Shown here in pieces: positions 1,653 to 44,170 of a DNA stretch of 64,000 nucleotides (position 1 is its first letter; each line of letters opens with the position of its first letter). Source of the stretch: Ranitomeya imitator (lineage: Eukaryota). Under the pieces are notes generated by a model, which saw nothing but the letters and a program-made list of their open reading frames with translations, was not told the DNA's origin and did not search any database. The stretch is taken from positions 489,676,001 through 489,740,000 of the forward strand of contig NC_091282.1 of NCBI RefSeq assembly GCF_032444005.1. The letters run 5' to 3'. Both the position numbers and the translations under genes were made by a program.

Positions 1653-3938
1653 CTATAAGAAACAGCTATAAGGTTGCAATTCATTAAGTCCTAATGGTTG
1701 GACTGTTTTTAAATAGAAAATCCATCTGCTTTCTTTTTGCAGGATTAATTTATCCCAGTCTCCTCCCCTCGTGGGTGGCTGAATTTTGTCTATTCCCACA
1801 AACATGATCTTTTTGATGTCACCCTGATGAAAGGAATTCATGTGGGTTGCCACTGGGGTTTCTCTCCTGTTGGCAATATCTCGAAGGTGCTCTCCCACCC
1901 TTTTACGAAACTCTCTTTTGGTTTTGCCCACATACTCCAAGCCACACTCACACTTCGCTTTATAGATAACACCTTTAGTACGGCAATTAATGAAGTGCCT
2001 AATGGAGTATGTGGTGCCTGTTACATTACTCGAGAATTCCTTTGCGGTCTGGATTGAGGAGCAAGCCTTACAACTGCCACATCTGAAACAGCCTTTGGTA
2101 TGGCCTAAGTGTGGAGTCAAATTACTTTTCGGGTCATAATGGCTATGAACCAACCTGTCCCCCAAAGATCTCCCTTTACTGTAGGTAATTTGTGGGTACG
2201 GGGCCACATATCCACTGATGTCCCTATCCATTAGGAGAATTGGCCAATGTTTTTGAAAGATTTCCTTGATGTCACTCGTACCCATTTACCCACTTTAACC
2301 CATTACATCATTTCCTTGATGTACCTCGTGATGAAGCGAATGGTCGTATCATTGTCCGATTTTACTCTAGTTGTTAAGAGATCTTTCCTTTCTTTTGCAA
2401 TAGTATCATTGTAGGCCTTCCTTAACACTCCCTCAGGGTAACCCCTATTCAAAAATCTGCCTCGGAGATCCTTGGCCTGTTCTTGAAAAGATACCGGATC
2501 CGAGCAATTCCTCCGAATTCTCAAATATTGGCCTTTGGGGATCCCTCTCTTCAGTGGGACCGGGTGATTACTCTCCCACCGAAGGAGGGAATTGGTAGCT
2601 GTGTCTTTCCTATGTGTCTTAGTGGAAATCGCCCCATTCCTGCCCCTTTCAATACAGATGTCCAAGAAAGCCAATTTTGTTGGACTGGCCTCGTATGTAA
2701 AATGTAGGCCAATGCTGTTCTTATTTAAACCCCTTACAAATGTGCCAAAATGATCAAGGCACCCTCTCCAGATGACCAGCACATCGTCGATGTACCTTAA
2801 CCATAATATTATCCTCTCATCTGGACCAGAGGTGTGCTCTCCAAAAACCACTGTTTCCTCCCACCAGCCCAGGAGCAGATTTGCATACGAAGGTGCACAA
2901 GGGCTCCCCATCGCGGTGCCCCTGAGCTGGTGGAAGTACTTGTGGTCGAACAGGAACACATTCTTGGTGAGACAAAACTCCAGGGCCTATAATACAAACT
3001 TGTTGTGTCTATCGTACTGTGTGCCCCTTGTGCTAAGGTAATGGTCCACAGCCAACAGACCTTTGTCATGCGGTATTGAAGAGTATAACGCTTCCACATC
3101 TATACTGGCTAGTATCATATCATCTTCCAGATAGATACCATCTAATTTGCCCAAGAGATCGGTGGTGTCTCGCACATAAGAGTTCAAAGCATTCACAAAG
3201 GGTTTTAAAATTTTGTCCACATATATTCCCAGTCTCTCTGTGAGGCTGTTATTGCCTGAGACTATCGGTCTTCCTTTAAGGGGGGTTGTACCTTTATGTA
3301 TCTTGGGGAGACAATAAAAAGTGGGAATGACCGGATTTCTTGGTATAAGAAAATCCCTCTCCTCTTTCCCCACCACCCCATCAACAAAACCCCCCTCAAC
3401 CATGGCAATCAACTCCGATAGAAAGGGGCCTGTTGGATTCTGACCCAAAACCTTATATTCATCTTTCTTGTTCAACAGTGAAAGGCACATCTCCCGGTAA
3501 TCCTTGGTGTTCATGATTACCACACTGCCCCCTTTGTCAGAGGGCTTTATTGTGATACTGTGATCCTTTTCAAGTTTACACAGGCTCGCCATTTCACTCT
3601 TGGACAAGTTGAATTGTCTTTTTCCCTTATGATTTGGCAGATTCATAATCTCTTCAGTGACCAAGTTCAAAAAAATGTCAATGGATCCGAGATCACCCAT
3701 TGGCGGGGGCATCCTAGAGCTCTTATTCCTAAGATCTGTGAAAGGGCCAGTACCATCTTGGTTGGGAATGGGATCACTCAGATGAAACAGAAGTTGCACG
3801 TCTTGGAGCAGTTCATCCGAAATGCCCAATTCCGTACATTGTCGTCTGTCTTCTCTGAGAAAGAATTTTTTCCATTTCAGCCGTCTCACAAATAAATTAA
3901 GGTCTTTGATGACCTCAAAAGTGTCCATATCAGAAGTG
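1653..3938 (-). pseudogene. Penelope-like RT-GIY-YIG ORF, 5'-truncated, with one in-frame stop (about 2987) and one frameshift (about 2300)
   Basis: RT motifs KPSDKGG, PTFYCLPKIHK, RPIVS, SIDVEALYSSIPH, GTAMGSPCAPSYANL, WLRYIDDVL; linker CFRCGSCKAC; GIY-YIG GVIYKAKCECGLEYVGKT...RVGEH...GLN. Pieces 2987-3973 and 2303-2959 share a frame separated by a TAG; 1653-2285 is in another frame. Confidence 0.9.
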
Positions 3939-9859: not shown

Positions 9860-11511
9860 CAGTTAGGGCCAGAAATATTTGGACAGTGACACAATTTTCG
9901 CGAGTTGGGCTCTGCATGCCACCACATTGGATTTGAAATGAAACCTCTACAACAGAATTCAAGTGCAGATTGTAACGTTTAATTTGAAGGGTTGAACAAA
10001 AATATCTGATAGAAAATGTAGGAATTGTACACATTTCTTTACAAACACTCCACATTTTAGGAGGTCAAAAGTAATTGGACAAATAAACATAACCCAAACA
10101 AAATATTTTTATTTTCAATATTTTGTTGCAAATCCTTTGGAGGCAATCACTGCCTTAAGTCTGGAACCCATGGACATCACCAAACGCTGGGTTTCCTCCT
10201 TCTTAATGCTTTGCCAGGCCTTTACAGCCGCAGCCTTCAGGTCTTGCTTGTTTGTGGGTCTTTCCGTCTTAAGTCTGGATTTGAGCAAGTGAAATGCATG
10301 CTCAATTGGGTTTAGAGCTGGAGATTGACTTGGCCATTGCAGAATGTTCCACTTTTTGGCACTCATGAACTCCTGGGTAGCTTTGGCTGTATGCTTGGGG
10401 TCATTGTCCATCTGTACTATGAAGCGCCGTCCAATCAACTTTGCAGCATTTGGCTGAATCTGGGCTGAAAGTATATCCCGGTACACTTCAGAATTCATCC
10501 GGCTACTCTTGTCTGCTCTTATGTCATCAATAAACACAAGTGACCCAGTGCCATTGAAAGCCATGCATGCCCATGCCATCACGTTGCCTCCACCATGTTT
10601 TACAGAGGATGTGGTGTGCCTTGGATCATGTGCCGTTCCCTTTCTTCTCCAAACTTTTTTCTTCCCATCATTCTGGTACAGGTTGATCTTTGTCTCATCT
10701 GTCCATAGAATACTTTTCCAGAACTGAGATGGCTTCTTGAGGTGTTTTTCTGCAAATTTAACTCTGGCCTGTCTATTTTTGGTATTGATGAATGGTTTGC
10801 ATCTAGATGTGAACCCTTTGTATTTACTGTCATGGAGTCTTCTCTTTACTGTTGACTTAGAGACAGATACACCTACTTCACTGAGAGTGTTCTGGACTTC
10901 AGTTGATGTTGTGAACGGGTTCTTCTTCACCAAATTAAGTATGCGGCGATCATCCACCACTGTTGTCATCCGTGGACGCCCAGGCCTTTTTGAGTTCCCA
11001 AGCTCACCAGTCAATTCCTTTTTTCTCAGAATGTACCCAACTGTTGATTTTGCTACTCCAAGCATGTCTGCTATCTCTCTGATGGATTTTTTCTTTTTTT
11101 TCAGCCTCAGGATGTTCTGCTTCACCTCAATTGAGAGTTCCTTTGACCGCATGTTGTCTGCTCACAGCAACAGCTTCCAAATGCAAAACCACACACCTGG
11201 AATCCACCCCTGACCTTTTAACTACTTCATTGATTACAGGTTAACGAGGGAGACGCCTTCAGAGTTAATTGCAGCCCTTAGAGTCCATTGTCCAATTACT
11301 TTTGGTCCCTTGAAAAAGAGGACGCTATGCATTACAGAGCTATGATTCCTAAACCCTTTCTCCGATTTGGATGTGGAAACTATCATATTGCAGCTGGGAG
11401 TGTGCACTTTCAGCCCATATTATATATATAATTGTATTTCTGAACATGTTTTTGTAAACAGCTAAAATAACAAAACTTGTGTCACTGTCCAAATATTTCT
11501 GGCCCTAACTG
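9860..11511 (-). mobile_element. Tc1-family transposon, full length (1652 bp), TA target duplication
   Basis: TIR cagttagggccagaaatatttggacagtgacacaa at both ends, flanked by TA. Confidence 0.95.
10115..11152 (-). CDS. Tc1 transposase, intact, 345 aa, DD34E
   Basis: N-terminal HTH (IREIADMLGVAKSTV), GRPR, WTDETK, MDNDPKH, then 34 residues to the E of SPALNPIE. Confidence 0.95.
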   Translation of the reverse strand: MRSKELSIEVKQNILRLKKKKKSIREIADMLGVAKSTVGYILRKKELTGELGNSKRPGRPRMTTVVDDRRILNLVKKNPFTTSTEVQNTLSEVGVSVSKSTVKRRLHDSKYKGFTSRCKPFINTKNRQARVKFAEKHLKKPSQFWKSILWTDETKINLYQNDGKKKVWRRKGTAHDPRHTTSSVKHGGGNVMAWACMAFNGTGSLVFIDDIRADKSSRMNSEVYRDILSAQIQPNAAKLIGRRFIVQMDNDPKHTAKATQEFMSAKKWNILQWPSQSPALNPIEHAFHLLKSRLKTERPTNKQDLKAAAVKAWQSIKKEETQRLVMSMGSRLKAVIASKGFATKY

Positions 11512-12508: not shown

Positions 12509-13175
12509 TTGTCCTCATATGAACTCGAGCCTGGGAGCTTTCTAGGAAAGTTCCCACGATCTATGTGTCTACTGACAGTATATACAGGTCCTTCTCAAAA
12601 AATTAGCATATAGTGTTAAATTTCATTATTTACCATAATGTAATGATTACAATTAAACTTTCATATATTATAGATTCATTATCCACCAACTGAAATTTGT
12701 CAGGTCTTTTATTGTTTTAATACTGATGATTTTGGCATACAACTCCTGATAACCCAAAAAACCTGTCTCAATAAATTAGCATATCAAGAAAAGGTTCTCT
12801 AAACGACCTATTACCCTAATCTTCTGAATCAACTAATTAACTCTAAACACATGCAAAAGATACCTGAGGCTTAAGGTACCTTCACACTGAGCGACGCTGC
12901 AGCGATATAGGCAACGATACGACCAAAAGGCGATCGCTGGAGCGTCGCTGTTTAGATCGCTGTAGAGACGTCAAACACACCAACGTTCGAACGATGCCGG
13001 AGCGATACAGTGACGTAACAGCGACTCACGGATCGTTGTCGCTGGTTGCTTGCTTCACGTCAAACAGCAGTGGTTAACGATCCGATGAATTGGCAGCGTA
13101 GTCAGATAGGTGTCACCCAGGTGGGTGACACCCAGATAGGTGTCACCCAGGATGTGACGTCCCGGCGTCTCAGAA

Positions 13176-13370
13176 TATAAACCGCGACTCTACAGCGATT
13201 GATTCACATTGTTCGAGAGCTGCGTATGCCTGTTTTTCCCTGCATTTCTAGCGTCCTGTCCGGAACGATCCTTCTCCAGCTACGATCCTCTTCTACCGTG
13301 AACGTTCTGTTCGGAACGCCGTACTCCACTGCCGGCGTCTTCATCGGTTCTTTTATTGCTCATCAACGGT
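13176..13370 (+). promoter_or_regulatory. Predicted TATA promoter and non-coding first exon of the transposase gene
   Basis: TATAAA at 13176-13181; donor cg/gtatgt at 13369; strong polypyrimidine acceptor ctttctcag at 16259, six bases before the transposase ATG. Inferred, no transcript data. Confidence 0.5.
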
Positions 13371-14148
13371 ATGTTCAATTTTTTTTTTTTTTGTATAGTA
13401 ATGGCTGTGTAGTAATGCTAGACGCAATGCTTATCTAAAGTATATGGTATAGTAATGTATAAAACATATCTGGCAGCTATCTTGTGCATCTGGTAAGCGT
13501 ACACACAAGATGGAGGCACTTTCGGATGCAGTTTGCAAACTATTTGGCGCTGTGTAGCATTTTTTGCGCAAACTATATGGTAAGGCCAACCAACTCTTTT
13601 GTGTCTACCTTGGCTTAGCTGTCCCTGGCCTGCTCCGCAAGTAAATAAAAACAGCTCACAACTGGTAAACTAAATTTTTTTTTTTCACAAACTGACCTTA
13701 TTTTTTTTTGATCAAGAGACAATCACTGTCACGCTATCTATATTCATCAAGTACGGTGTCAGAAAAATGAATTCATGATAAACATATACAGGCTCCTGAA
13801 TTCACTATTTCTGACACCTGGCAGGTGAGCATAGATATGTACCGTGTGACAACCATTGTCCCCTCAATTTGTGTGATTATGGAGATGCATGTAATATTTT
13901 TGGCCCACCTCATATCTGTATACTACAGACACACCAAGCTGCAGTCTTTTCATTTTTAACTACTGGAGATATTATGTGGGCCAAAAAGTGTGTGTGGCGA
14001 CGTTTCTTGGCGCACGGTGTGTTGCCGGTGGCTATAGACACAATAAACCAAACATAATTGTGTCAAATCAAACTTTTTTTATGTTGTTAACTGAAAAATA
14101 ACAAGTAACAGAACAATATCCCAAACAATGAAAGAAAAAAAAAAAAAA

Positions 14149-15753
14149 TCAGAACCTCCCACGCCTCAAGAGGTGTCGCAGCGTGCGGCCATGTTGCTGT
14201 ACTTGTTGCAGCATGAGCGCTGCTGTCCGCTCCAGGCGGTCTTGCTTGGCCAGCAGCTCTCTCACGGTGTCCGGTTCTGTGATAGAAGAGGTTGGAGAAT
14301 GGACAGTGATAAAGCTGCAACGGTGGCATGTGTTTACATAACCAGCAATTTTACCGTACCGTCAAAAATAACGATTTTTGTAACGATATCTTTGATTTCT
14401 GTGAAGTTTCAACGATATTGTTAACGCAATCGTTCTGTGTGACAGCGACCCAGCGACCACACAGTGACTTACCAACGATCACGACCAGGTCGTATAGCTG
14501 GTAATGATCGTTAGTAATTCGTTTATTGTAAAATGGTACTTGTAACTACACACTCAATTTTCTACTGCCCCAGAGGGCTTTTTTTAGGTTCAATGTTTTA
14601 GGGTCCGTTTAGTCGTTGTCAAATGTGACATCCCACCGATAACCCCCTCCCACTTTCTCAATACTTACGGAAAAGGGACGCCTGTTGCTCATCCGCGGAG
14701 CTGCTGACCACCCATCCCCTGGCTCGGGCCACAGCTCCTGCTGCTGAAAGGAAGCAAATACATATCTGGTTAACAATTGAACTCACTGTGGTGAAGCGCT
14801 CGCTGGTTTTGTCACTTACGAATGCTTGTCGCTGGAGAGAATGACGCCGACCCGGGGGAGGAAGATGGGTGTTGAAAGGGCGGGGTTGTGGCCTGCGGTG
14901 GGGTTACTGCACCTGTAATGTACACAATATTTAACCTCCCTACTAATGGCCCGTATGGCGTCATTAAATTCTAAAAAAGGGTGGTTAACTTACGTGACGA
15001 CACTGGCTGTGGGCTTCCGCTGCTAGCCGCTGTACTGCTGGCTGCAGTGGGTGCTGTCCTCTGCCGGCGGCGTCTCTCTACACCCCAAAAAAAGACACGC
15101 AAGGTTTAGACACCAGAAGTACAGAGCTGTCGACTTAAATAAAAAATTAAGTAGGCGCCATCGCAATTGCCAGACATGAGGGGTAACTTACGTGACGGCC
15201 CTGGCTGTGGGCGTACGCTGCTGGCCGCTGTAGTCCTCTGCTGGCGTTGTCTCTCTATACACAAAAAATAAAGAAACACAATGTTTACACACCAAAGTAC
15301 AGAGCTTCCGACACCCCCACAAATAACAAACCTAGGCCAGTGGCATAAAGGAATAAAATTTAAATTTAACTCCCCAAATCGAGGTACATATATAGAAGGT
15401 GGGAAGCGCCACACGGCAGTGCGAGTGTCCCTATTCCCCCCTCCCGATACTGTGTGTCTCCCAATTACACTATACTGTTACTTGCCTTGCCTGGTCTCTG
15501 CCCGCAACGTTGCCAGATAAAGTGGCTGTTTGTACCGGAGGTCGGCCCACTTTTTGCGTAGCTGCAGCGCACTGCGCCGGATGCCGAACCTCCGCTCCAT
15601 CTTCTGGGCAATGTGGCGCAACACCTCATTCTTATGTAGATTTGGGTGTGCTGGGCGACTCTCCCGGCCCTCATAGTCCATGGCATCCATTTTTTTTACA
15701 AAAAAGCGGACCTCTGTCTGCCCCAAAGGAGGACATCGCTGTCTCGCCGCCAT
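14149..15753 (-). CDS. Predicted 6-exon Myb/SANT-like DNA-binding protein (236 aa): exons 15753-15486, 15254-15192, 15077-14994, 14912-14820, 14743-14669, 14276-14149
   Basis: Exon 1 reads MAARQRCPPLGQTEVRFFVKKM...KNEVLRHIAQKMERRFGIRRSALQLRKKWADLRYKQ (Myb/SANT-like, MSANTD-type). All five introns are phase 1 (donors GCAAGT, then GTAAGT four times; AG acceptors). The joined frame is open for 711 nt and ends in a coiled-coil-like PDTVRELLAKQDRLERTAALMLQQVQQHGRTLRHLLRRGRF*. Confidence 0.75.
14357..14540. mobile_element. Degenerate MITE of the same Harbinger family inside the last intron of the Myb/SANT gene
   Basis: Ends gtaccgtcaaaaataacg and cgtttattgtaaaatggtact resemble the aggtaccgtcacac TIR. 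Confidence 0.4.
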
Positions 15754-16065
15754 TTTAGCAAGAGAGACGCTGTATGGCACCACCCAGCCACGCCCAGAGG
15801 AGGTCCTTGATTCTACCGTTCTGACGCGCAATTCGCAACGCTATAGCGTCTCCATTTATGCACACCGTCGCGGGTGTGACGTCGGCTCCAGAAGTCACTA
15901 TTTGGCGTTCCCGTTATAAATCAGCAGCGCTCATCGTCCTGTTTGTTTCAGTGGATGGTACATTTAATGGAGGGTATCTATGGGGTATGGCTGTTGTGTT
16001 AACGTTGCTTACAATTAGCCATGTATATCTCTGTGTATGTATATATGTATGTGTGTGTATGTATG

Positions 16066-16067
16066 TG

Positions 16068-16104
<37 letters not shown>

Positions 16105-16114
16105 ATATATATAT
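16066..16114. repeat. (TA)n microsatellite
   Basis: Run of ta repeats, directly visible. Confidence 0.95.
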
Positions 16115-16265
16115 AGTACCTTACATCCTATGTTAACATTTTTGTCAAATGGTGCAGCATCGGTGACGCAACGGAGAATGCATTACAGTATTGGATGTCT
16201 TGTGTAAGTTTTGAAAATGATATGTAGTAATTTTTTTTTTTTCTTTTTTCCTTTCTCAGGTTGCC

Positions 16266-17525
16266 ATGTCTCATTCGGATGTACCTGTGATTGTTGCGGC
16301 CGCGTTATTGGTAGAAGCTCACAACCAGCTGGAGGTTCAAGCGCGAAACAATCGTGTAAAGCGTCAGCGCCGCATGTGGACCAAACAGTGGCTGCAGAAG
16401 AGGAATCAATTGTCCCATATGGGCCTTATAAGGGAACTGCAGGATAACAACCCGCATGATTTTCGTAACTACCTGAGAATGTCGGAGGACTCATTTAATG
16501 TCCTACTTGCAGCTGTAGAACCTTATATCAGGCGGCAAAATACACAGATGAGAGCAGCTGTCCCTGTGGATGAGAGGCTGGCTGTCACGCTGCGTTTCCT
16601 GGCGACTGGCAGGTCTATGCAAGACTTGCATTACAGCGCAGCTATATCCCGATCCCTACTCAGCGTCATCATCCCAGAGACATGCAAAGCTATTGTCTCA
16701 GTTTTACACCGCAGTTACATGCCTTTCCCACAGACCCCGGATGACTGGAAAGAGATTTCTAGGGGATTTGAGGAGCAATGGCAGTTCCCGAATTGCGGTG
16801 GGGCCTTGGATGGCAAACATGTACGCATCACCCAACCACCACACTCTGGCTCCTTTTATTATAACTATAAGGGATATTTCAGCATAATTCTCATGGCCCT
16901 CGTAAATGCTAACTATGATTTCATAAGTGTGTCTGTTGGGATTAACGGGAGAGTATCCGATGGAGGAGTTTTGGAGCACACAGATTTTGGGGAACGCTTG
17001 AAAAATAATAAACTTGCCTTGCCGCCCAACAGTGACACAACAGAAAACATGAACTTTGTCTTTGTCGGAGATGAGGCTTTCCCACTGCATCCGAACCTTT
17101 TGAAGCCCTTCTCCCAGAAGACTCTGACACCGGAACGACGAATCTTTAATTACAGACTTTCAAGAGCTAGACGCGTTGTTGAAAATGCATTCGGAATTAT
17201 GGCAAACCGATTTCGGGTTTTCCACACAGCACTAAACATGAAACTAACGTCTATTGACTCTGTGGTGCTTGCTTGTTGTGTCCTCCACAACTTTCTACGT
17301 CGCCGTGATGCCACTGCATACAGCCCTACACAGTATGTAGACTCTGTGGACCAGGGTAACGGAGATGTAACCCAGGGCGAATGGCGTCTAGACGCGCACA
17401 GGGTTTGTGGTTTGGAAAGTCTGGGTTCTGGAAGGTACTGTGATGATGCAACTAATAGCAGGGACAAATACTCTGACTTTTTCAATGGGCCAGGGGCTGT
17501 CCCATGGCAGTATCAACAGCTGTAA
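16266..17525 (+). CDS. Harbinger (HARBI1-like, DDE_Tnp_4) transposase, intact, 419 aa
   Basis: FRNYLRMSEDSF, ERLAVTLRFLATG, catalytic GALDGKH / VGDEAFPL / RRVVENAFG, LACCVLHNFL. Confidence 0.95.
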   Translation: MSHSDVPVIVAAALLVEAHNQLEVQARNNRVKRQRRMWTKQWLQKRNQLSHMGLIRELQDNNPHDFRNYLRMSEDSFNVLLAAVEPYIRRQNTQMRAAVPVDERLAVTLRFLATGRSMQDLHYSAAISRSLLSVIIPETCKAIVSVLHRSYMPFPQTPDDWKEISRGFEEQWQFPNCGGALDGKHVRITQPPHSGSFYYNYKGYFSIILMALVNANYDFISVSVGINGRVSDGGVLEHTDFGERLKNNKLALPPNSDTTENMNFVFVGDEAFPLHPNLLKPFSQKTLTPERRIFNYRLSRARRVVENAFGIMANRFRVFHTALNMKLTSIDSVVLACCVLHNFLRRRDATAYSPTQYVDSVDQGNGDVTQGEWRLDAHRVCGLESLGSGRYCDDATNSRDKYSDFFNGPGAVPWQYQQL

Positions 17526-17858
17526 CGTAACTGTTGGCATAACTTATACCATGTATTATGGATGATATTGTTGGGGGGTTCAAGTGCTCTTGTGTAAAAG
17601 TGCTCATTTTTAACAATTTTTGGATGACCCATGATACTCCTTTTTCTGTAATAAATGTGAACATAACGATATATCTATTTGTTATTTCTTATTATTTTAC
17701 ATACATACCAATACATACCAATCAACATATATATCTATGAACATACTCTACTTCTGTATCAATCATATGAAACCTGTGAGTCTTCAGCATCCTATGCACT
17801 AGTGATTTCCTGATGTGTGTGTGTATATATATATTAGTAGATGTTCACCATATTCTAA

Positions 17859-18575
17859 AGGTACCTTCACACTCATCGACTCTGCAGCGATACCGACAAT
17901 GATGTCGATCGCTGTTTGGTCGCTGGAGAGCTGTCACACAGACAGCTCTCCAGCGAGCACCGATCCAGAAGTCCACGGGTAACCAGGGTAAACATCGGGT
18001 TACTAAGTGCAGGGCCGCGATTATTAACCCGATGTTTACCCTGGTTACCGTTGTAAATGTTAAAAAAAAATTACAATACATACTTACATTCACGCTGTAT
18101 AGTCATGTCCCTCGCCTTCAGCTTCCAGCACTGACTCAGCGCCGGGCGTAAAGTACAACGGTGATGTCAACGCTGTGCTTTACTACCGGACGGCGCTCAC
18201 CAGTCAGTGCGGGAAGCCGAAGGCGAGGGACTTGACCATACAGCGGGAATGTATGTACTGTTTGTTTTTTAAACATTGACAACGGTAACCATGGTAAACA
18301 TCACGTTACTAAGAGTGGCCCTGCACTTATTAACCCAATGTTTCCCTTGTTTCTTGTGACGACATCGCTGAATCGGCGTTACACATGCTGTGTGTAACGC
18401 CGATTCAGCGATGTCAGCGGGAGATTCAGCAACCACAAAAAGTGCTGTACTTTCCCCAGCGACCAATGATCTCCCAGCATACATTACCGTCACACAACAA
18501 TTTAGTTAACGATATCGTTGCTACGTCACAAAAAGCAACGATATCGTTAACAATATAGTTATGTGTGACGGTAAT
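17859..18575. mobile_element. Harbinger-family MITE copy between the convergent 3' ends of the transposase and MADF genes
   Basis: Starts taa|aggtaccttcacac; internal blocks (ggtaaccagggtaaacatcgggttactaag, catcgctgaatcggcg) shared with the MITE at 43279; right end degenerate. Confidence 0.7.
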
Positions 18576-18879
18576 GTATTGGGTATTCTAGCATTTGCAT
18601 GTCCCCGTCGCATATTGCCCAGCAACGTAGTATATTGACCAGCGGCGTCATTTATTGCCAAGCCAAAGAGACACGTAGTACATACACAAATTTAAGAAAC
18701 CAAAAATTTTATTATTTGTATTAAAAATTTTATTATTTGTTATTACAATACTTTTTTAATGTTGATGAGGCATAGGGGATTAATGACCGGGTGCCAGGAG
18801 GATGCCTGCAGGGGAGAAGGCATAGGGGATTACTTGTGGAGCATCTAAAACACAAGTCTCATTTATTTAAACTACAACA

Positions 18880-20180
18880 CTACAAATTTTGGTAGTAAGT
18901 GTCCTTCTCACTGTAGTGGTGCGTGGCTATAGGAGGTCCTTGTGATAAGTCACCAAAAGAAGGGGGTGCAGGTGGTGTCCGGAACTGAGAATTATGTGGC
19001 CCAGGTCTGCGGACAGGAGTGCTGTGCATGGGCTCCTGTTGGTGTCCCCAATAAAAATGGGCACTGGGCTGACGGACGTCAATGCTCAATGTTGATGTGT
19101 CGCATAGTTTTCCTGCGGCTGCCGCGTTCATAACGTCAAACATTATTCTCTCCGCGTGAGATCTTTGGGTATCATCCAGTCTGTTTAAACGTTCCTCAAC
19201 CAAGGATGCGAATGGGGAGAGTTTGGTTGTGACGTGCTTGGACAAGATGCTGTTGGCCACTGCCAGGAGATCCACAGGTGTGGCTGCTGTTGATTTTCTT
19301 TTTCTAGATGGGCGCAGTGGACATGTCTGCTCCTCGACAGACGGGCTACTGGAGGACTGAGGGGACTGGACATTGTTCGCTTCCGTTGTTTCCCGCTGTT
19401 GCAGAGGCACCTGCAATTACATGAAAAAGAAAAATTTAAAATAAATAACATACAAACGACTCTGCCACACAGCCCTAGAGAGCCCACACCTCCCCAAACA
19501 CCTCTATGCCCATTGGAACCTATGAGGAACAGTTACCTGGGTTAAAAAACAAAGGGGTTAAAGAGCTGTGCAGAACTACATTGGCCGGCAATACTGTACG
19601 AATGTGCGGAAGACACAATATGTTAATTACGGACACAGGAAGTGGCAGCTGTTATCATCAGGGGGATTAAACATGAACAACGTGACTCACTATTACTGGA
19701 AGCCATGCAGTCTCATAAACATACAAGACACACGGCATGCTACAAGAAGGGAAGCTTGGGGCTACTTACATGGTCGTCAGGAGACTCAGGCAGGATATCT
19801 TCGGGCGATGGCTCACAAAGGCTAGTCACAGTCTGGCACGGGCGAGGGATTTCTTGGTCTCTAGTGAATGCCATCAGGTCGTAATACCACAGCCTGGGCA
19901 CATAGACTTCCTCAGTTCCGGCCCCAGACTTCTTAGAATTTTCCACTTTGTTGACCTCTTTTTTGAAAACTGTGCGGAGAGCCTGGATCTTTTTCCTCAC
20001 AATGTTTTCATCCACGGTCTCTGTGGGATGATACTCCCTGTAGACGGCCACCAGCTTCTCATACGCTTCTCTCTTCATGTAACGGTTGCTATAATCCTTA
20101 GATTTTATCTTCCACAAACAGGGCAGGGAGCGGTACATCTCTATGAGTGCCCGAACACAGTCCTGCTCATTTGTAGACAT
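18880..20180 (-). CDS. Predicted 2-exon MADF-domain DNA-binding protein (313 aa): exons 20180-19770 and 19410-18880
   Basis: MADF signature LIEMYRSLPCLW...YSNR...AYEKL...VRKKIQALRTVFKKE...SGAG...YVPRLWYYDLMAF; phase-0 donor cat/gtaagt joins phase-0 acceptor tgcag/gtg; C-terminal helical segment FASLVEERLNRLDDTQRSHAERIMFDVM. Confidence 0.85.
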
Positions 20181-20642
20181 CTTTAAAAAATAAAAAAATA
20201 AAAGTTAAGAAACAGCAAAAAATAAAAGTTTGATGAGCCGTATGCCGTTCCTATTGTTATCAGTCATTTTTTGTATGGGATGGTCCGTGGGACTATTTCC
20301 ACCATTTAGGGGATGGGATGGGGGCCGTTTGTGTGTTTCCTCATAGCCACCATTTGGGGATGGGATGAGGGCTATTTTTATCCATTTTGAGCGTTGAAAA
20401 ATTTGTAAATTCTATTGGTTGCTATTTTGTCAATGGCCAAATTCATGTTGGTGAAACACACCATACTACAAAATCGTTTGCATTACCACTTAAAAGGGAA
20501 ATACTACGACGCTAAAGCGTCTTTGGTTATAAACGTGAAAGCTCTAAAAAAATCACTGCTGAGATGTAGTATACATCTATTTCTATACACATAAATTAGT
20601 ATTGCTGCATGGCAAATGAATACAGCACAAGGATATACTCAC

Positions 20643-20832
20643 CGTAGATGTACTAATTGAGAACGCTGCAGAGTTGAAGATCTACAAACAGGTCGCTCAA
20701 AAGTTACAGCCAAGACGCCCACGAGTTGATGGAGAAGGAACACGATGGATTTCGAACCAAGACGCACACGAGATGCTCGTGGATGGCAGAGTACGCACAA
20801 GTGATTGAAAAGTTGTAAAGTCGCGGTTTATA
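20643..20832 (-). promoter_or_regulatory. Predicted TATA promoter and non-coding first exon of the MADF gene
   Basis: TATAAA at 20832-20827; donor cg/gtgagt at 20642; acceptor ttttttaaag immediately before the ATG at 20180. Confidence 0.55.
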
Positions 20833-20899
20833 TTTCGGAACGCAGGTACACATGACCCCGATGTGACCTATCAGCGTTCTCAGTGAGACGTAACAACAA

Positions 20900-43144: not shown

Positions 43145-44170
43145 TGTACCTCTCCCACTCCCTCTTCAACCACTTACAATCTACCTTCAGATTTACCTCT
43201 CTGGACCAAATATCACCTCCTTACGAACCAGAATCCCACAATGATATCTTTCTTCTCTGCTAGATTTCTAAAACTTAAAGGTTCCGTCACACTAGACAAT
43301 ATCGCTAGCGATCCGTGACGTTGCAGCGTCCTGGCTAGCGATATCGTCCAGTGTGACAGGCAGCAGCGATCAGGCCCCTGCTGTGATATCGCTGGTCGGG
43401 GAAGAAAGTCCAGAACTTTGTTTCGTCGCTGGATCTCCCGCTGACATCGCTGAATCGGCGTGTGTGACGCCGATTCAGCGATGTCTTCGCTGGTAACCAG
43501 GGTAAACATCAGGTTACTAAGCGCAGGGCCGCGCTTAATAACCCGATGTTTACCCTGGTTACCATCATTAAAGTAAAAAAAACAACCACTACATACTTAC
43601 CTACCGCTGTCTGTCCTCGGCGCTCTGCTTCTCTGCTCTGGCTGTGAGCACAGCGGCCGGAAAGCAGAGCAGTGACATCACCGCTCTGCTTTCCGGCTGC
43701 CCGGCGCTCACAGCCAGAGCAGAGAAGCACAGCGCCAAGGACAGACAGCGGTAGGTAAGTATGTAGTGGTTGTTTTTTTTACTTTAACGATGGTAACCAG
43801 GGCAAACATCGGGTTACTAAGCGCGGCCCTGCGCTTAGTAACCCAATGTTTACCCTGGTTACCGGGGACCTCGGGATCGTTGGTCGCTGGAGAGCTGTCT
43901 GTGTGACAGCTCTCCAGCGACCAAACAGCGACGCTGCAGCGATCCGGATCGTTGTCGGTATCGCTGCAGCGTCGCTTAGTGTGACGGTACCTTAACATGG
44001 TTAAAATAAAATTAATCATCTTTCCCCATCTCACTCAACCACTTCCAACAGATTTATCCATCAAAGTCAATGGCTGCTCACTCTCCCAAGTTAACCCTTG
44101 ACTGTGATCTCCCATTTAAACCACATATCCAAGCCCTTTCCACTTCATGCCGACTCCAACTCAAAAATAT
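43145..44170 (+). mobile_element. Old L2 fragments (43145-43270 and 44005-44170) flanking a MITE
   Basis: 44100-44170 (tttaaaccacatatccaagccctttccacttcatgccgactccaactcaaaaatat) resembles the L2 copy at 47310-47370. Confidence 0.5.
43279..43992. mobile_element. Harbinger MITE (714 bp), TAA target duplication, ends homologous to the autonomous element at 12874-21568
   Basis: taa|aggttccgtcacac ... gtgtgacggtacct|taa; terminal 100-150 bp align by eye to both ends of the full-length element. Confidence 0.9.

What the first reader, a model, noticed from the sequence alone, without database searches (positions are those of the whole stretch)
14149..15753. Hidden 6-exon Myb/SANT gene, antisense inside the predicted 5'UTR intron of the transposase
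The ORF track shows only exon 1. By hand, five phase-1 introns (first donor the non-canonical AG/GCAAGT, the others GTAAGT) join exons of 268, 63, 84, 93, 75 and 128 nt into a stop-free 236-aa protein: Myb/SANT-like domain, then an S/P/A-rich linker, then a coiled-coil-like tail. Five consistent-phase junctions are unlikely by chance. The gene sits head-to-head with the transposase CDS and within its inferred 2.9-kb leader intron (13369-16259), which suggests transcriptional interference or mutual control.
Basis: partly seen in the sequence, partly recalled or inferred. Interest (0 to 1): 0.8.

Follow-up and report, generated by a model that had tools for sequence, protein, structure and literature searches.

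The report
Third gene in frog Harbinger transposon
The predicted six-exon gene is real: it encodes a small Myb/SANT-type (trihelix) DNA-binding protein carried inside a recently active Harbinger jumping gene of a poison frog, next to the transposase and a MADF gene, whereas such elements are described with two genes; its first splice and the claimed nesting in a transposase leader intron remain unproven.

Summary
On the minus strand of 14149-15753, six exons join into a stop-free 711-nt CDS of 236 aa. All five introns are phase 1, with the first donor AAG|GCAAGT, four GTAAGT donors and good acceptors. Spliced RNA contigs show introns 4 and 5 exactly. RefSeq proteins of Ranitomeya imitator are 100% identical to exons 2-6. 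R. variabilis proteins are collinear with all six exons.

Exon 1 folds as a trihelix Myb/SANT-like domain of the NAIF1/MSANTD/GT-1 type. A disordered S/A/P/R linker and a conserved long C-terminal helix follow it.

The gene is not a host gene. It lies inside a 7.7-kb PIF/Harbinger element (about 13136-20871, CAG flanks), with a 419-aa DDE_Tnp_4 transposase found identical at 11 or more places and a 313-aa MADF gene. The same three genes co-occur in other frog Harbinger families, in different orders.

Three points are not shown:
- splicing of the GC-AG intron 1 in this family;
- the 2.9-kb transposase leader intron;
- any transcriptional interference.

The scan had already found this gene on other copies in this genome (s1-312543, s1-274988, s1-294663). 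I rate it a new variant of a known kind, of moderate interest.

The parts
15486..15753 (-). Exon 1 (ATG at 15753): 89 codons plus 1 nt encoding the trihelix Myb/SANT-like domain. It ends CAAG|GCAAGT, a GC donor.
   Evidence: Pfam Myb_DNA-bind_4 E=1.2e-5 and Myb_DNA-bind_5 E=5.8e-4, both just under the gathering score. AF2 pLDDT 86.8 with four helices. Fold matches to GT-1, Zeste, MYPOP, FSBP, TSNARE1, NAIF1 and MSANTD3/4/5.
15255..15485 (-). Intron 1, phase 1, GC-AG (GCAAGT ... TTTTTTGTGTATAG). This is the least supported junction.
   Evidence: Not seen spliced. Supported by collinear R. variabilis proteins. The intron position and phase are the same, with a GT donor, in the distant relative L001.
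15192..15254 (-). Exon 2 (63 nt), an arginine-rich then S/A/P unit. It is a tandem duplicate of the exon 3 unit.
   Evidence: Protein identical in RefSeq P0057/P0061/P0062.
14994..15077 (-). Exon 3 (84 nt), the second copy of the duplicated exon-plus-intron unit.
   Evidence: P0063 and P0054 differ by exactly one such 28-aa unit.
14820..14912 (-). Exon 4 (93 nt), P/S/T-rich linker.
   Evidence: The joint 14743->14820 in run X7 gives its 3' junction.
14669..14743 (-). Exon 5 (75 nt), end of the linker with the conserved ARGW..SSS..E motif.
   Evidence: Joints 14743->14820 and 14276->14669. Alignment of tails.
14149..14276 (-). Exon 6 (128 nt including the TGA at 14149-14151): conserved long C-terminal helix.
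   Evidence: Joint 14276->14669 in X1, X6 and X7. Tail conserved across families. Helix 185-225 at pLDDT 85-90 in the model of homolog P0054.
15754..16265 (.). 512-bp divergent intergenic region between the Myb ATG and the transposase ATG. It holds TATA-like boxes on both strands, a GC box, a (TA/TG)n microsatellite at 16022-16122, and the acceptor TCTCAG| at 16259.
   Evidence: Sequence. A promoter function is inferred, not tested.
16266..17525 (+). PIF/Harbinger transposase, an intact 419-aa single ORF.
   Evidence: DDE_Tnp_4 E=1.4e-33. The exact protein is found at 11 or more places in GCA_032444005.1.
18880..20180 (-). MADF gene of two exons (20180-19770 and 19410-18880), 313 aa, convergent with the transposase.
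   Evidence: MADF_DNA_bdg E=2.9e-15. Model. A 313-aa MADF gene is annotated at this offset in every copy shown.
13136..13368 (+). Left terminal region: imperfect TIR starting ATAGGT after a CAG flank (13133-13135), the shared 16-mer AATATAAACCGCGACT (13174-13189), and a putative leader exon ending at the donor CAACG|GT (13368/13369).
   Evidence: The TSS and the splice are inferred only.
20643..20871 (-). Right terminal region, a mirror image of the left: TIR ending ...ACCTAT before CAG (20872-20874), the same 16-mer, and a leader exon ending CTACG|GT. The intron 20642-20181 ends directly before the MADF ATG.

Best explanation
The six-exon gene is a transposon gene. It is the trihelix 'Myb-like' accessory protein of an autonomous, recently amplified PIF/Harbinger DNA transposon of a dendrobatid frog (the genome matches Ranitomeya imitator GCA_032444005.1).

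The element spans about 13136-20871 with CAG flanks and carries three genes: <-Myb-like, transposase->, <-MADF.

Shown:
- the exon structure and part of the splicing;
- the trihelix fold of exon 1;
- a disordered basic/S-P-A linker built from duplicated symmetrical (phase 1-1) exons;
- a conserved C-terminal helix;
- multi-copy linkage to the transposase and MADF genes;
- retention of the same three genes in diverged frog Harbinger families.

Inferred by analogy with Harbinger3_DR and rice Ping/Pong (as summarised in PMC9392472, PMC9710019 and PMC13668399): the protein binds a subterminal motif of the element. The 16-mer AATATAAACCGCGACT present once at each end is the obvious candidate. Through its C-terminal helix and/or trihelix it would contact the transposase, helping its nuclear import (the arginine clusters in exons 2-3 are candidate NLS) and its recruitment to the ends. 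How the work is divided with the MADF protein is unknown.

Expression most likely starts from the 512-bp divergent region shared with the transposase. Whether the transposase mRNA instead starts at the left end and splices over the whole Myb gene is open.
For: - Gene model and statistics.
- Spliced RNA contigs for introns 4 and 5.
- RefSeq proteins identical to exons 2-6, and collinear R. variabilis proteins across all exons.
- Trihelix domain: Pfam near-threshold hits. 14 and 12 of 24 family members hit Myb_DNA-bind_5 and Myb_DNA-bind_4. AF2 pLDDT 86.8. Best folds are GT-1 and Zeste in the PDB, and MYPOP, FSBP, TSNARE1, NAIF1 and MSANTD3/4/5 in Swiss-Prot, at TM 0.6-0.68.
- Architecture of the full-length homolog. 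Conserved tail.
- Transposon membership: the exact transposase is at 11 or more places, always with the MADF gene at the same offset. A gene with exactly the window's 1605-bp span is annotated at the same offset.
- Same layout in R. variabilis.
- Other layouts with the same three genes: Anomaloglossus, Tnp-> Myb-> <-MADF. A second R. imitator family, Myb-> <-MADF. The Logan contig L001, Tnp / MADF / Myb.
- Element ends.
Against: - Intron 1 was never seen spliced. Contigs 14842-16021, 15016-16009 and others cross introns 1-3 unspliced, and unspliced depth exceeds spliced depth in run X1.
- The runs are only guessed to be RNA, and they also hold DNA-like contigs across the element end.
- R. imitator RefSeq models leave the Myb domain out.
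- All Pfam hits are below the gathering score, and no solved structure matches by sequence.
- Identity among copies shows recent amplification, not selection. No dN/dS could be computed, because no DNA of other copies was obtainable.
- No binding, interaction or transposition data exist.
- The MADF protein could be the only functional partner and this gene a passenger or a regulator.
Confidence: 0.78

Rival explanations
1. Regulator rather than helper. The MADF protein is the cognate transposition partner. The trihelix protein is a transposon-encoded modulator, for example a repressor competing for the ends or titrating the transposase. Its antisense position within the transposase's primary transcript would couple its expression inversely to transposase expression.
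For: - MADF is the canonical partner in insect and nematode PIF/Harbingers (PMC9710019, PMC13668399), and it is annotated in every copy.
- Both ends carry homologous leader-like regions ending in a GT donor. The transposase ATG lies 6 nt behind a strong acceptor, so a left-end transcript would have to run antisense through the Myb gene.
- A relative (L001) interleaves antisense exons of MADF and transposase.
Against: - No 13368^16260 joint was seen.
- In sister families the Myb gene lies downstream of the transposase on the same strand, so antisense nesting is not a conserved requirement.
- The trihelix type is the canonical partner of vertebrate Harbingers (NAIF1/MSANTD relatives; PMC9392472).
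Confidence: 0.12
2. Passenger or decaying gene. A captured or formerly functional Myb-like gene now rides along without function. The open frame is kept only because the copies are young.
For: - Copies are near-identical, so the intact ORF in this family alone proves little.
- Intron 1 splicing is unproven, and transcripts look mostly unspliced.
- The paralog P0018 is N-terminally truncated and has no transposase or MADF neighbour.
Against: - The frame, the domain, the intron position and phase, and the C-terminal helix are retained between families only 29-63% identical and in three gene orders. Neutral decay does not explain this.
- The family is found across anurans.
Confidence: 0.07
3. Domesticated host gene that merely sits beside a transposase.
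For: The proteins are annotated as ordinary 'uncharacterized protein' loci by RefSeq.
Against: - There are at least six annotated identical copies on several chromosomes, always at the same offset from the identical transposase and MADF genes.
- The gene lies between terminal inverted repeats.
Confidence: 0.03

Closest known systems
Myb-like protein of vertebrate Harbinger elements (Harbinger3_DR of zebrafish) and its domesticated descendants NAIF1 and MSANTD1-5, MYPOP, FSBP, TSNARE1
   Same: - N-terminal trihelix Myb/SANT-like domain of the Myb_DNA-bind_4/5 type. These proteins are the best fold matches.
- Encoded as a separate gene inside a PIF/Harbinger element beside a DDE_Tnp_4 transposase.
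- Expected role: binding subterminal DNA and recruiting and importing the transposase (PMC9392472, PMC9710019).
   Different: - Sequence similarity is below Pfam thresholds.
- The protein is short (236 aa), with a disordered linker made of duplicated phase-1 exons and a family-specific C-terminal helix.
- It shares its element with a second, MADF-type DNA-binding gene.
- Its function is untested.
MADF-type accessory gene of insect and nematode PIF/Harbingers (Drosophila PIF-like elements, Caenorhabditis Turmoil)
   Same: It is the second gene of a two-gene Harbinger, often head-to-head with the transposase (PMC13668399), and it is a Myb/SANT-like fold.
   Different: The window gene is not a MADF protein (MADF E=0.039, below threshold). 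The MADF role is filled here by a separate gene at 18880-20180.
Plant trihelix factors (GT-1) and Drosophila Zeste DNA-binding domain
   Same: These are the best solved-structure matches to the exon-1 model (2ebi and 5cqq, TM 0.58).
   Different: They are host transcription factors. There is no sequence-level relationship beyond the fold (12-25% identity).
NCBI RefSeq models XP_069602021.1 / XP_069601395.1 / XP_069615936.1 (R. imitator) and XP_077132157.1 / XP_077116461.1 (R. variabilis)
   Same: - Same locus type.
- The R. variabilis models share all six exons' worth of protein.
   Different: - The R. imitator models replace the Myb domain by read-through of intron 1, reached through a 14-nt first exon and weak splice sites.
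- None carries a domain or a transposon annotation.

Membership tests
PIF/Harbinger Myb-like accessory protein | Trihelix / Myb/SANT-like DNA-binding domain | tested here: met
   Pfam Myb_DNA-bind_4 at 26.0 bits (cut-off 27) and Myb_DNA-bind_5 at 20.2 bits (cut-off 21.7). 14 and 12 of 24 relatives hit these two families. The AF2 model has pLDDT 86.8 and matches GT-1, Zeste, NAIF1 and MSANTD3/4/5. By sequence alone it is sub-threshold.
PIF/Harbinger Myb-like accessory protein | Encoded within the same element as a DDE_Tnp_4 transposase | tested here: met
   The transposase lies 512 bp away. The same offsets recur at multiple genomic copies. The co-occurrence recurs in other families.
PIF/Harbinger Myb-like accessory protein | Element bounded by TIRs with a 3-bp target-site duplication | tested here: inconclusive
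   The ends start ATAGGT on both sides and are flanked by CAG/CAG. The terminal approx 265 nt are homologous but imperfect. No empty site or second copy's flank could be read.
PIF/Harbinger Myb-like accessory protein | Binds subterminal repeats, interacts with the transposase, imports it, and is required for transposition | not testable with these tools
   Only a candidate site (a 16-mer at both ends), candidate NLS clusters and a conserved C-terminal helix.
MADF domain proteins (PF10545) | Significant match to the MADF profile | tested here: not met
   E=0.039, 14.7 bits against a cut-off of 22. 1 of 24 relatives matches at E<=0.01.
Domesticated Harbinger-derived host genes (NAIF1/MSANTD type) | Single-copy, syntenic, without TIRs or a linked active transposase | tested here: not met
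   Multiple identical copies are linked to identical transposase and MADF genes.
GC-AG (U2-type) intron | GC donor in an otherwise consensus 5' splice site, an AG acceptor, and an observed spliced product | tested here: inconclusive
   The site is AAG|GCAAGT with a strong acceptor. The intron position and phase are the same as in L001, which has GT. Proteins of R. variabilis are collinear. No spliced contig was seen.

The most novel reading that the evidence does not exclude
A frog lineage of Harbinger transposons has evolved an obligate three-protein system: a transposase plus two unlike DNA-binding partners, a MADF protein and a trihelix protein with a coiled-coil-like tail. Its genes are nested or interleaved antisense within each other's introns and driven from mirror-image terminal promoters. 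Splicing and antisense transcription would then set the ratio of the three proteins and so time transposition.
Probability: 0.25. Interest if true: 0.65.

Novelty: new variant of a known kind. Interest (0 to 1): 0.45.

Why it matters
PIF/Harbinger elements are defined in the literature I could search by two genes, a transposase plus one Myb-like or MADF partner (PMC9710019, PMC9392472, PMC13668399, PMC9179366).

Here both kinds of partner sit in one young, multi-copy, apparently autonomous element, and the trio recurs in diverged frog families. That gives a natural system to ask what each DNA-binding partner does: end recognition, nuclear import or regulation. It also bears on how NAIF1/MSANTD-type and MADF-type host genes could each have been recruited.

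There is a practical point too. The R. imitator RefSeq models of this gene lose the DNA-binding domain, and the whole anuran family is labelled 'uncharacterized'. Transposon genes are therefore being counted as host genes.

Tried and rejected
- Chance ORF: rejected.
- Host or domesticated gene: rejected by multi-copy linkage.
- MADF or classical Myb membership: rejected.
- Sequence search of solved structures with the family profile: nothing meaningful.
- Tail (exons 2-6) against Pfam: no family.
- Leader intron 13369-16259 in four RNA runs: no joint found, but contigs cannot show absence.
- DNA of other copies or orthologs, to test splice-site conservation and dN/dS: every large-genome locus came back without DNA. 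Xenopus proteins were not on record. Only the distant Logan contigs L001 and L002 gave DNA.
- The unknown sequence joined to the exon-2 acceptor in run X7 is not in the window.
- The Sinzelle 2008 and Smith 2012 papers are not held, so Harbinger3_DR facts are cited second-hand.
- I did not submit the spliced 236-aa protein as typed letters. It was searched as exon 1 by reference and as P0057:76-222, which is identical to exons 2-6.

Full report
**1. Observation**

| Exon | Coordinates | Length (nt) |
|---|---|---|
| 1 | 15753-15486 | 268 |
| 2 | 15254-15192 | 63 |
| 3 | 15077-14994 | 84 |
| 4 | 14912-14820 | 93 |
| 5 | 14743-14669 | 75 |
| 6 | 14276-14149 | 128 |

- They give a 711-nt frame of 236 codons ending in TGA.
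- All five introns are phase 1.
- The first donor is CAAG|GCAAGT, with a TAA in frame just inside it. The other four are GTAAGT.
- All acceptors are AG behind pyrimidine runs.

Chance does not explain this:

- The unspliced stretch has 13-28 stops in each frame.
- The chance of 147 stop-free codons (exons 2-6) at this composition is about 7e-4.
- There are five GTAAGT on this strand where 0.43 are expected.
- Exons are 61% GC and introns 42%.

Exon 2 with its intron and exon 3 with its intron are a diverged tandem duplication. Because every intron is phase 1, such units can be gained or lost without breaking the frame.

**2. Transcript and annotation evidence**

Four public runs, labelled RNA by guess and kept as Logan contigs, were laid on 13100-17700.

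- Contigs skip exactly 14277-14668 in three runs from three studies. These ends read CT..AC, which is GT..AG on the minus strand.
- Contigs skip exactly 14744-14819 in one run.
- Introns 1-3 were crossed only by unspliced contigs (for example 14842-16021).
- One contig uses the exon-2 acceptor but joins it to sequence that is not in the window.

The exact 419-aa transposase of the window is on record at 11 or more places of assembly GCA_032444005.1. Other look-ups tie this assembly to Ranitomeya imitator. At one of those places a 219-aa gene is annotated at precisely the window's 14149-15753 offset.

RefSeq models compare as follows:

|---|---|---|---|
| P0062 | R. imitator | 219 | 100% identical to residues 90-236, confirming junctions 2-5 |
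| P0061 | R. imitator | 223 | same |
| P0057 | R. imitator | 222 | same |
| P0054 | R. variabilis | 227 | collinear with residues 1-235, junction 1 included, 63% identity |
| P0063 | R. variabilis | 255 | same; one extra 28-aa linker unit |

The N-termini of the R. imitator models jump after 4-5 codons into intron 1 and read it through. Placed on the window sequence, this needs GACA|GCGATG and an acceptor without a pyrimidine tract.

In a distant relative for which DNA was available (Logan contig L001, 29% identity), the first exon ends AAAAG|GTATTT. This is the same alignment column and the same phase as the window's intron 1, with a canonical GT.

Intron 1 is therefore well supported by comparison but not by direct RNA evidence in this family.

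**3. What the protein is**

- Exon 1 scores just under the Pfam thresholds for Myb_DNA-bind_4 (E=1.2e-5) and Myb_DNA-bind_5.
- An exhaustive HMMER search found 49 relatives. All those looked up are from frogs and are named 'uncharacterized' or misnamed. The genera are Ranitomeya, Phyllobates, Anomaloglossus, Eleutherodactylus, Hyperolius, Lithobates, Aquarana, Xenopus and Bufo.
- Of 24 aligned domains, 14 hit Myb_DNA-bind_5 and 12 hit Myb_DNA-bind_4.
- The AlphaFold model of exon 1 is confident (pLDDT 86.8).
- Its best structural matches are the GT-1 trihelix and Zeste DNA-binding domains.
- Among reviewed proteins the best matches are MYPOP, FSBP, TSNARE1, NAIF1 and MSANTD3/4/5 (TM 0.6-0.68). 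This group includes the known Harbinger-derived Myb-like genes (PMC9392472).
- A model of the full-length homolog P0054 shows the trihelix domain (residues 12-96), a disordered stretch (about 100-184) and one long helix (185-225, pLDDT 85-90).
- That tail is recognisably conserved between families whose Myb domains are only 45-50% identical.
- The linker is S/A/P/R/Q-rich, and an arginine cluster opens each duplicated unit. These clusters are candidate NLS, which is an inference.

**4. Context**

The gene is part of a transposon.

- The transposase (16266-17525, DDE_Tnp_4 E=1.4e-33) starts 512 bp from the Myb ATG on the other strand.
- A two-exon MADF gene (20180-19770 and 19410-18880, 313 aa) converges on the transposase.
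- The two ends of the unit are homologous in inverted orientation for about 265 nt. Each starts ATAGGT next to a CAG (13133-13135 and 20872-20874). They share a 16-mer, AATATAAACCGCGACT. Each ends at a CATCWACG|GT donor.
- All copies looked up keep the same offsets, and R. variabilis has the same layout.

Other families carry the same three genes in other orders:

| Source | Gene order |
|---|---|
| Window family (R. imitator, R. variabilis) | <-Myb, Tnp->, <-MADF |
| Anomaloglossus | Tnp-> Myb-> <-MADF |
| Second R. imitator family | Myb-> <-MADF |
| L001 | Tnp, MADF, Myb |

In L001, MADF exon 2 lies antisense inside an intron of the transposase CDS.

The papers I could read describe PIF/Harbinger elements as two-gene elements whose partner is either Myb-like/trihelix or MADF (PMC9710019, PMC13668399, PMC9392472, PMC9179366). 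I found none describing both in one element. This is a limited search, not proof of absence.

**5. The leader-intron claim**

- The transposase ATG lies 6 nt behind a strong acceptor (…CCTTTCTCAG|).
- The MADF ATG lies directly behind one (…TTTTTTAAAG|).
- Each end offers a donor about 235 nt in.

Against or undecided:

- No joint 13368^16260 appeared.
- Contigs run unspliced across the left donor, and even across the element end, so the runs contain DNA-like or read-through material.
- A TATA-like box at about 15912 with nearby GT donors offers a short-leader alternative.
- In sister families the Myb gene is not between the end and the transposase.

Interference or mutual control is therefore an untested idea.

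**6. Mechanism**

The most likely reading is that this is the canonical vertebrate-type Harbinger accessory protein. The trihelix would bind a subterminal motif, and the helix and/or trihelix would contact the transposase. Nuclear import and recruitment to the ends would follow, as shown for Harbinger3_DR and rice elements according to PMC9392472 and PMC9710019.

All of this is by analogy. The anatomy and the linkage are shown. Binding, interaction and requirement for transposition are inferred.

Rival readings are a regulator, a passenger or a host gene. They are weighed in their own sections.

**7. Verdict**

- The gene model is real.
- The Myb/SANT reading is correct.
- The gene belongs to a known kind (the Harbinger Myb-like gene) in an unusual three-gene setting.
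- Earlier entries of this scan had already reached the same gene on other copies (s1-312543, s1-274988, s1-294663), and this element was noted as a whole (s1-294680, s1-295112).
- My tests agree with them, including the doubt about the first splice. To that doubt I add the conserved intron position and phase in L001 and the collinear R. variabilis proteins.

Noticed in passing
L001:1-4705 (Logan contig of SRR27853841): A distant relative of the element has interleaved antisense genes. The transposase CDS is split by an intron (about 458-1105). That intron contains, on the other strand, the second exon of the MADF gene (596-1027). MADF exon 1 (2081-2572) lies beyond transposase exon 2. The Myb-family gene follows at 2880-3190 and onwards.
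   Followed up: partly
window 15255-15753 versus RefSeq P0057/P0061/P0062: NCBI models of this gene in the same genome keep the ATG and exons 2-6. They drop the Myb domain by joining a 14-nt first exon to read-through of intron 1, using weak splice signals. Three different N-termini are annotated for near-identical copies.
   Followed up: yes
window 13390-14131: Other copies seen in RNA-run contigs replace this approx 740-bp stretch by 26-36 other letters. It lies between the left donor with its poly-T and the poly-A-like run at the Myb gene's 3' end. It is therefore a copy-specific insertion, or a deletion in the others. It holds the 3' UTR of this copy's Myb gene.
   Followed up: no
window 14345-14470 (inside intron 5), 17841-18579 and 43379-44007: A palindromic MITE-like repeat family. 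The fragment in intron 5 has 10-100 times the contig depth of its surroundings in all four runs, so the repeat is abundant and transcribed somewhere in the genome.
   Followed up: no
window 13103-13135: Just outside the left end lies a second partial copy of the terminal sequence (CAGATAGGTGTCACCCAGG), followed by its inverted fragment. Together they form a palindrome. It is possibly a footprint or the remnant of an earlier insertion at the same target.
   Followed up: no
window 10115-11152 (-): An intact 345-aa Tc1/mariner-type transposase ORF lies 2 kb left of the Harbinger.
   Followed up: no
window 15256, run X7: A contig uses the exon-2 acceptor but continues upstream into 178 nt that are not in the window. 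It may be a chimeric transcript in which another exon splices into the transposon gene, or a diverged copy.
   Followed up: partly
window 14983-15312; proteins P0054 and P0063: The exon-plus-intron unit encoding the arginine-cluster plus S/A/P segment is tandemly duplicated here. It varies in number between annotated R. variabilis copies: the 227-aa and 255-aa proteins differ by exactly one 28-aa unit.
   Followed up: partly
window 16022-16122: A (TG/TA)n microsatellite sits between the divergent promoter region and the transposase acceptor. Contigs break there.
   Followed up: no
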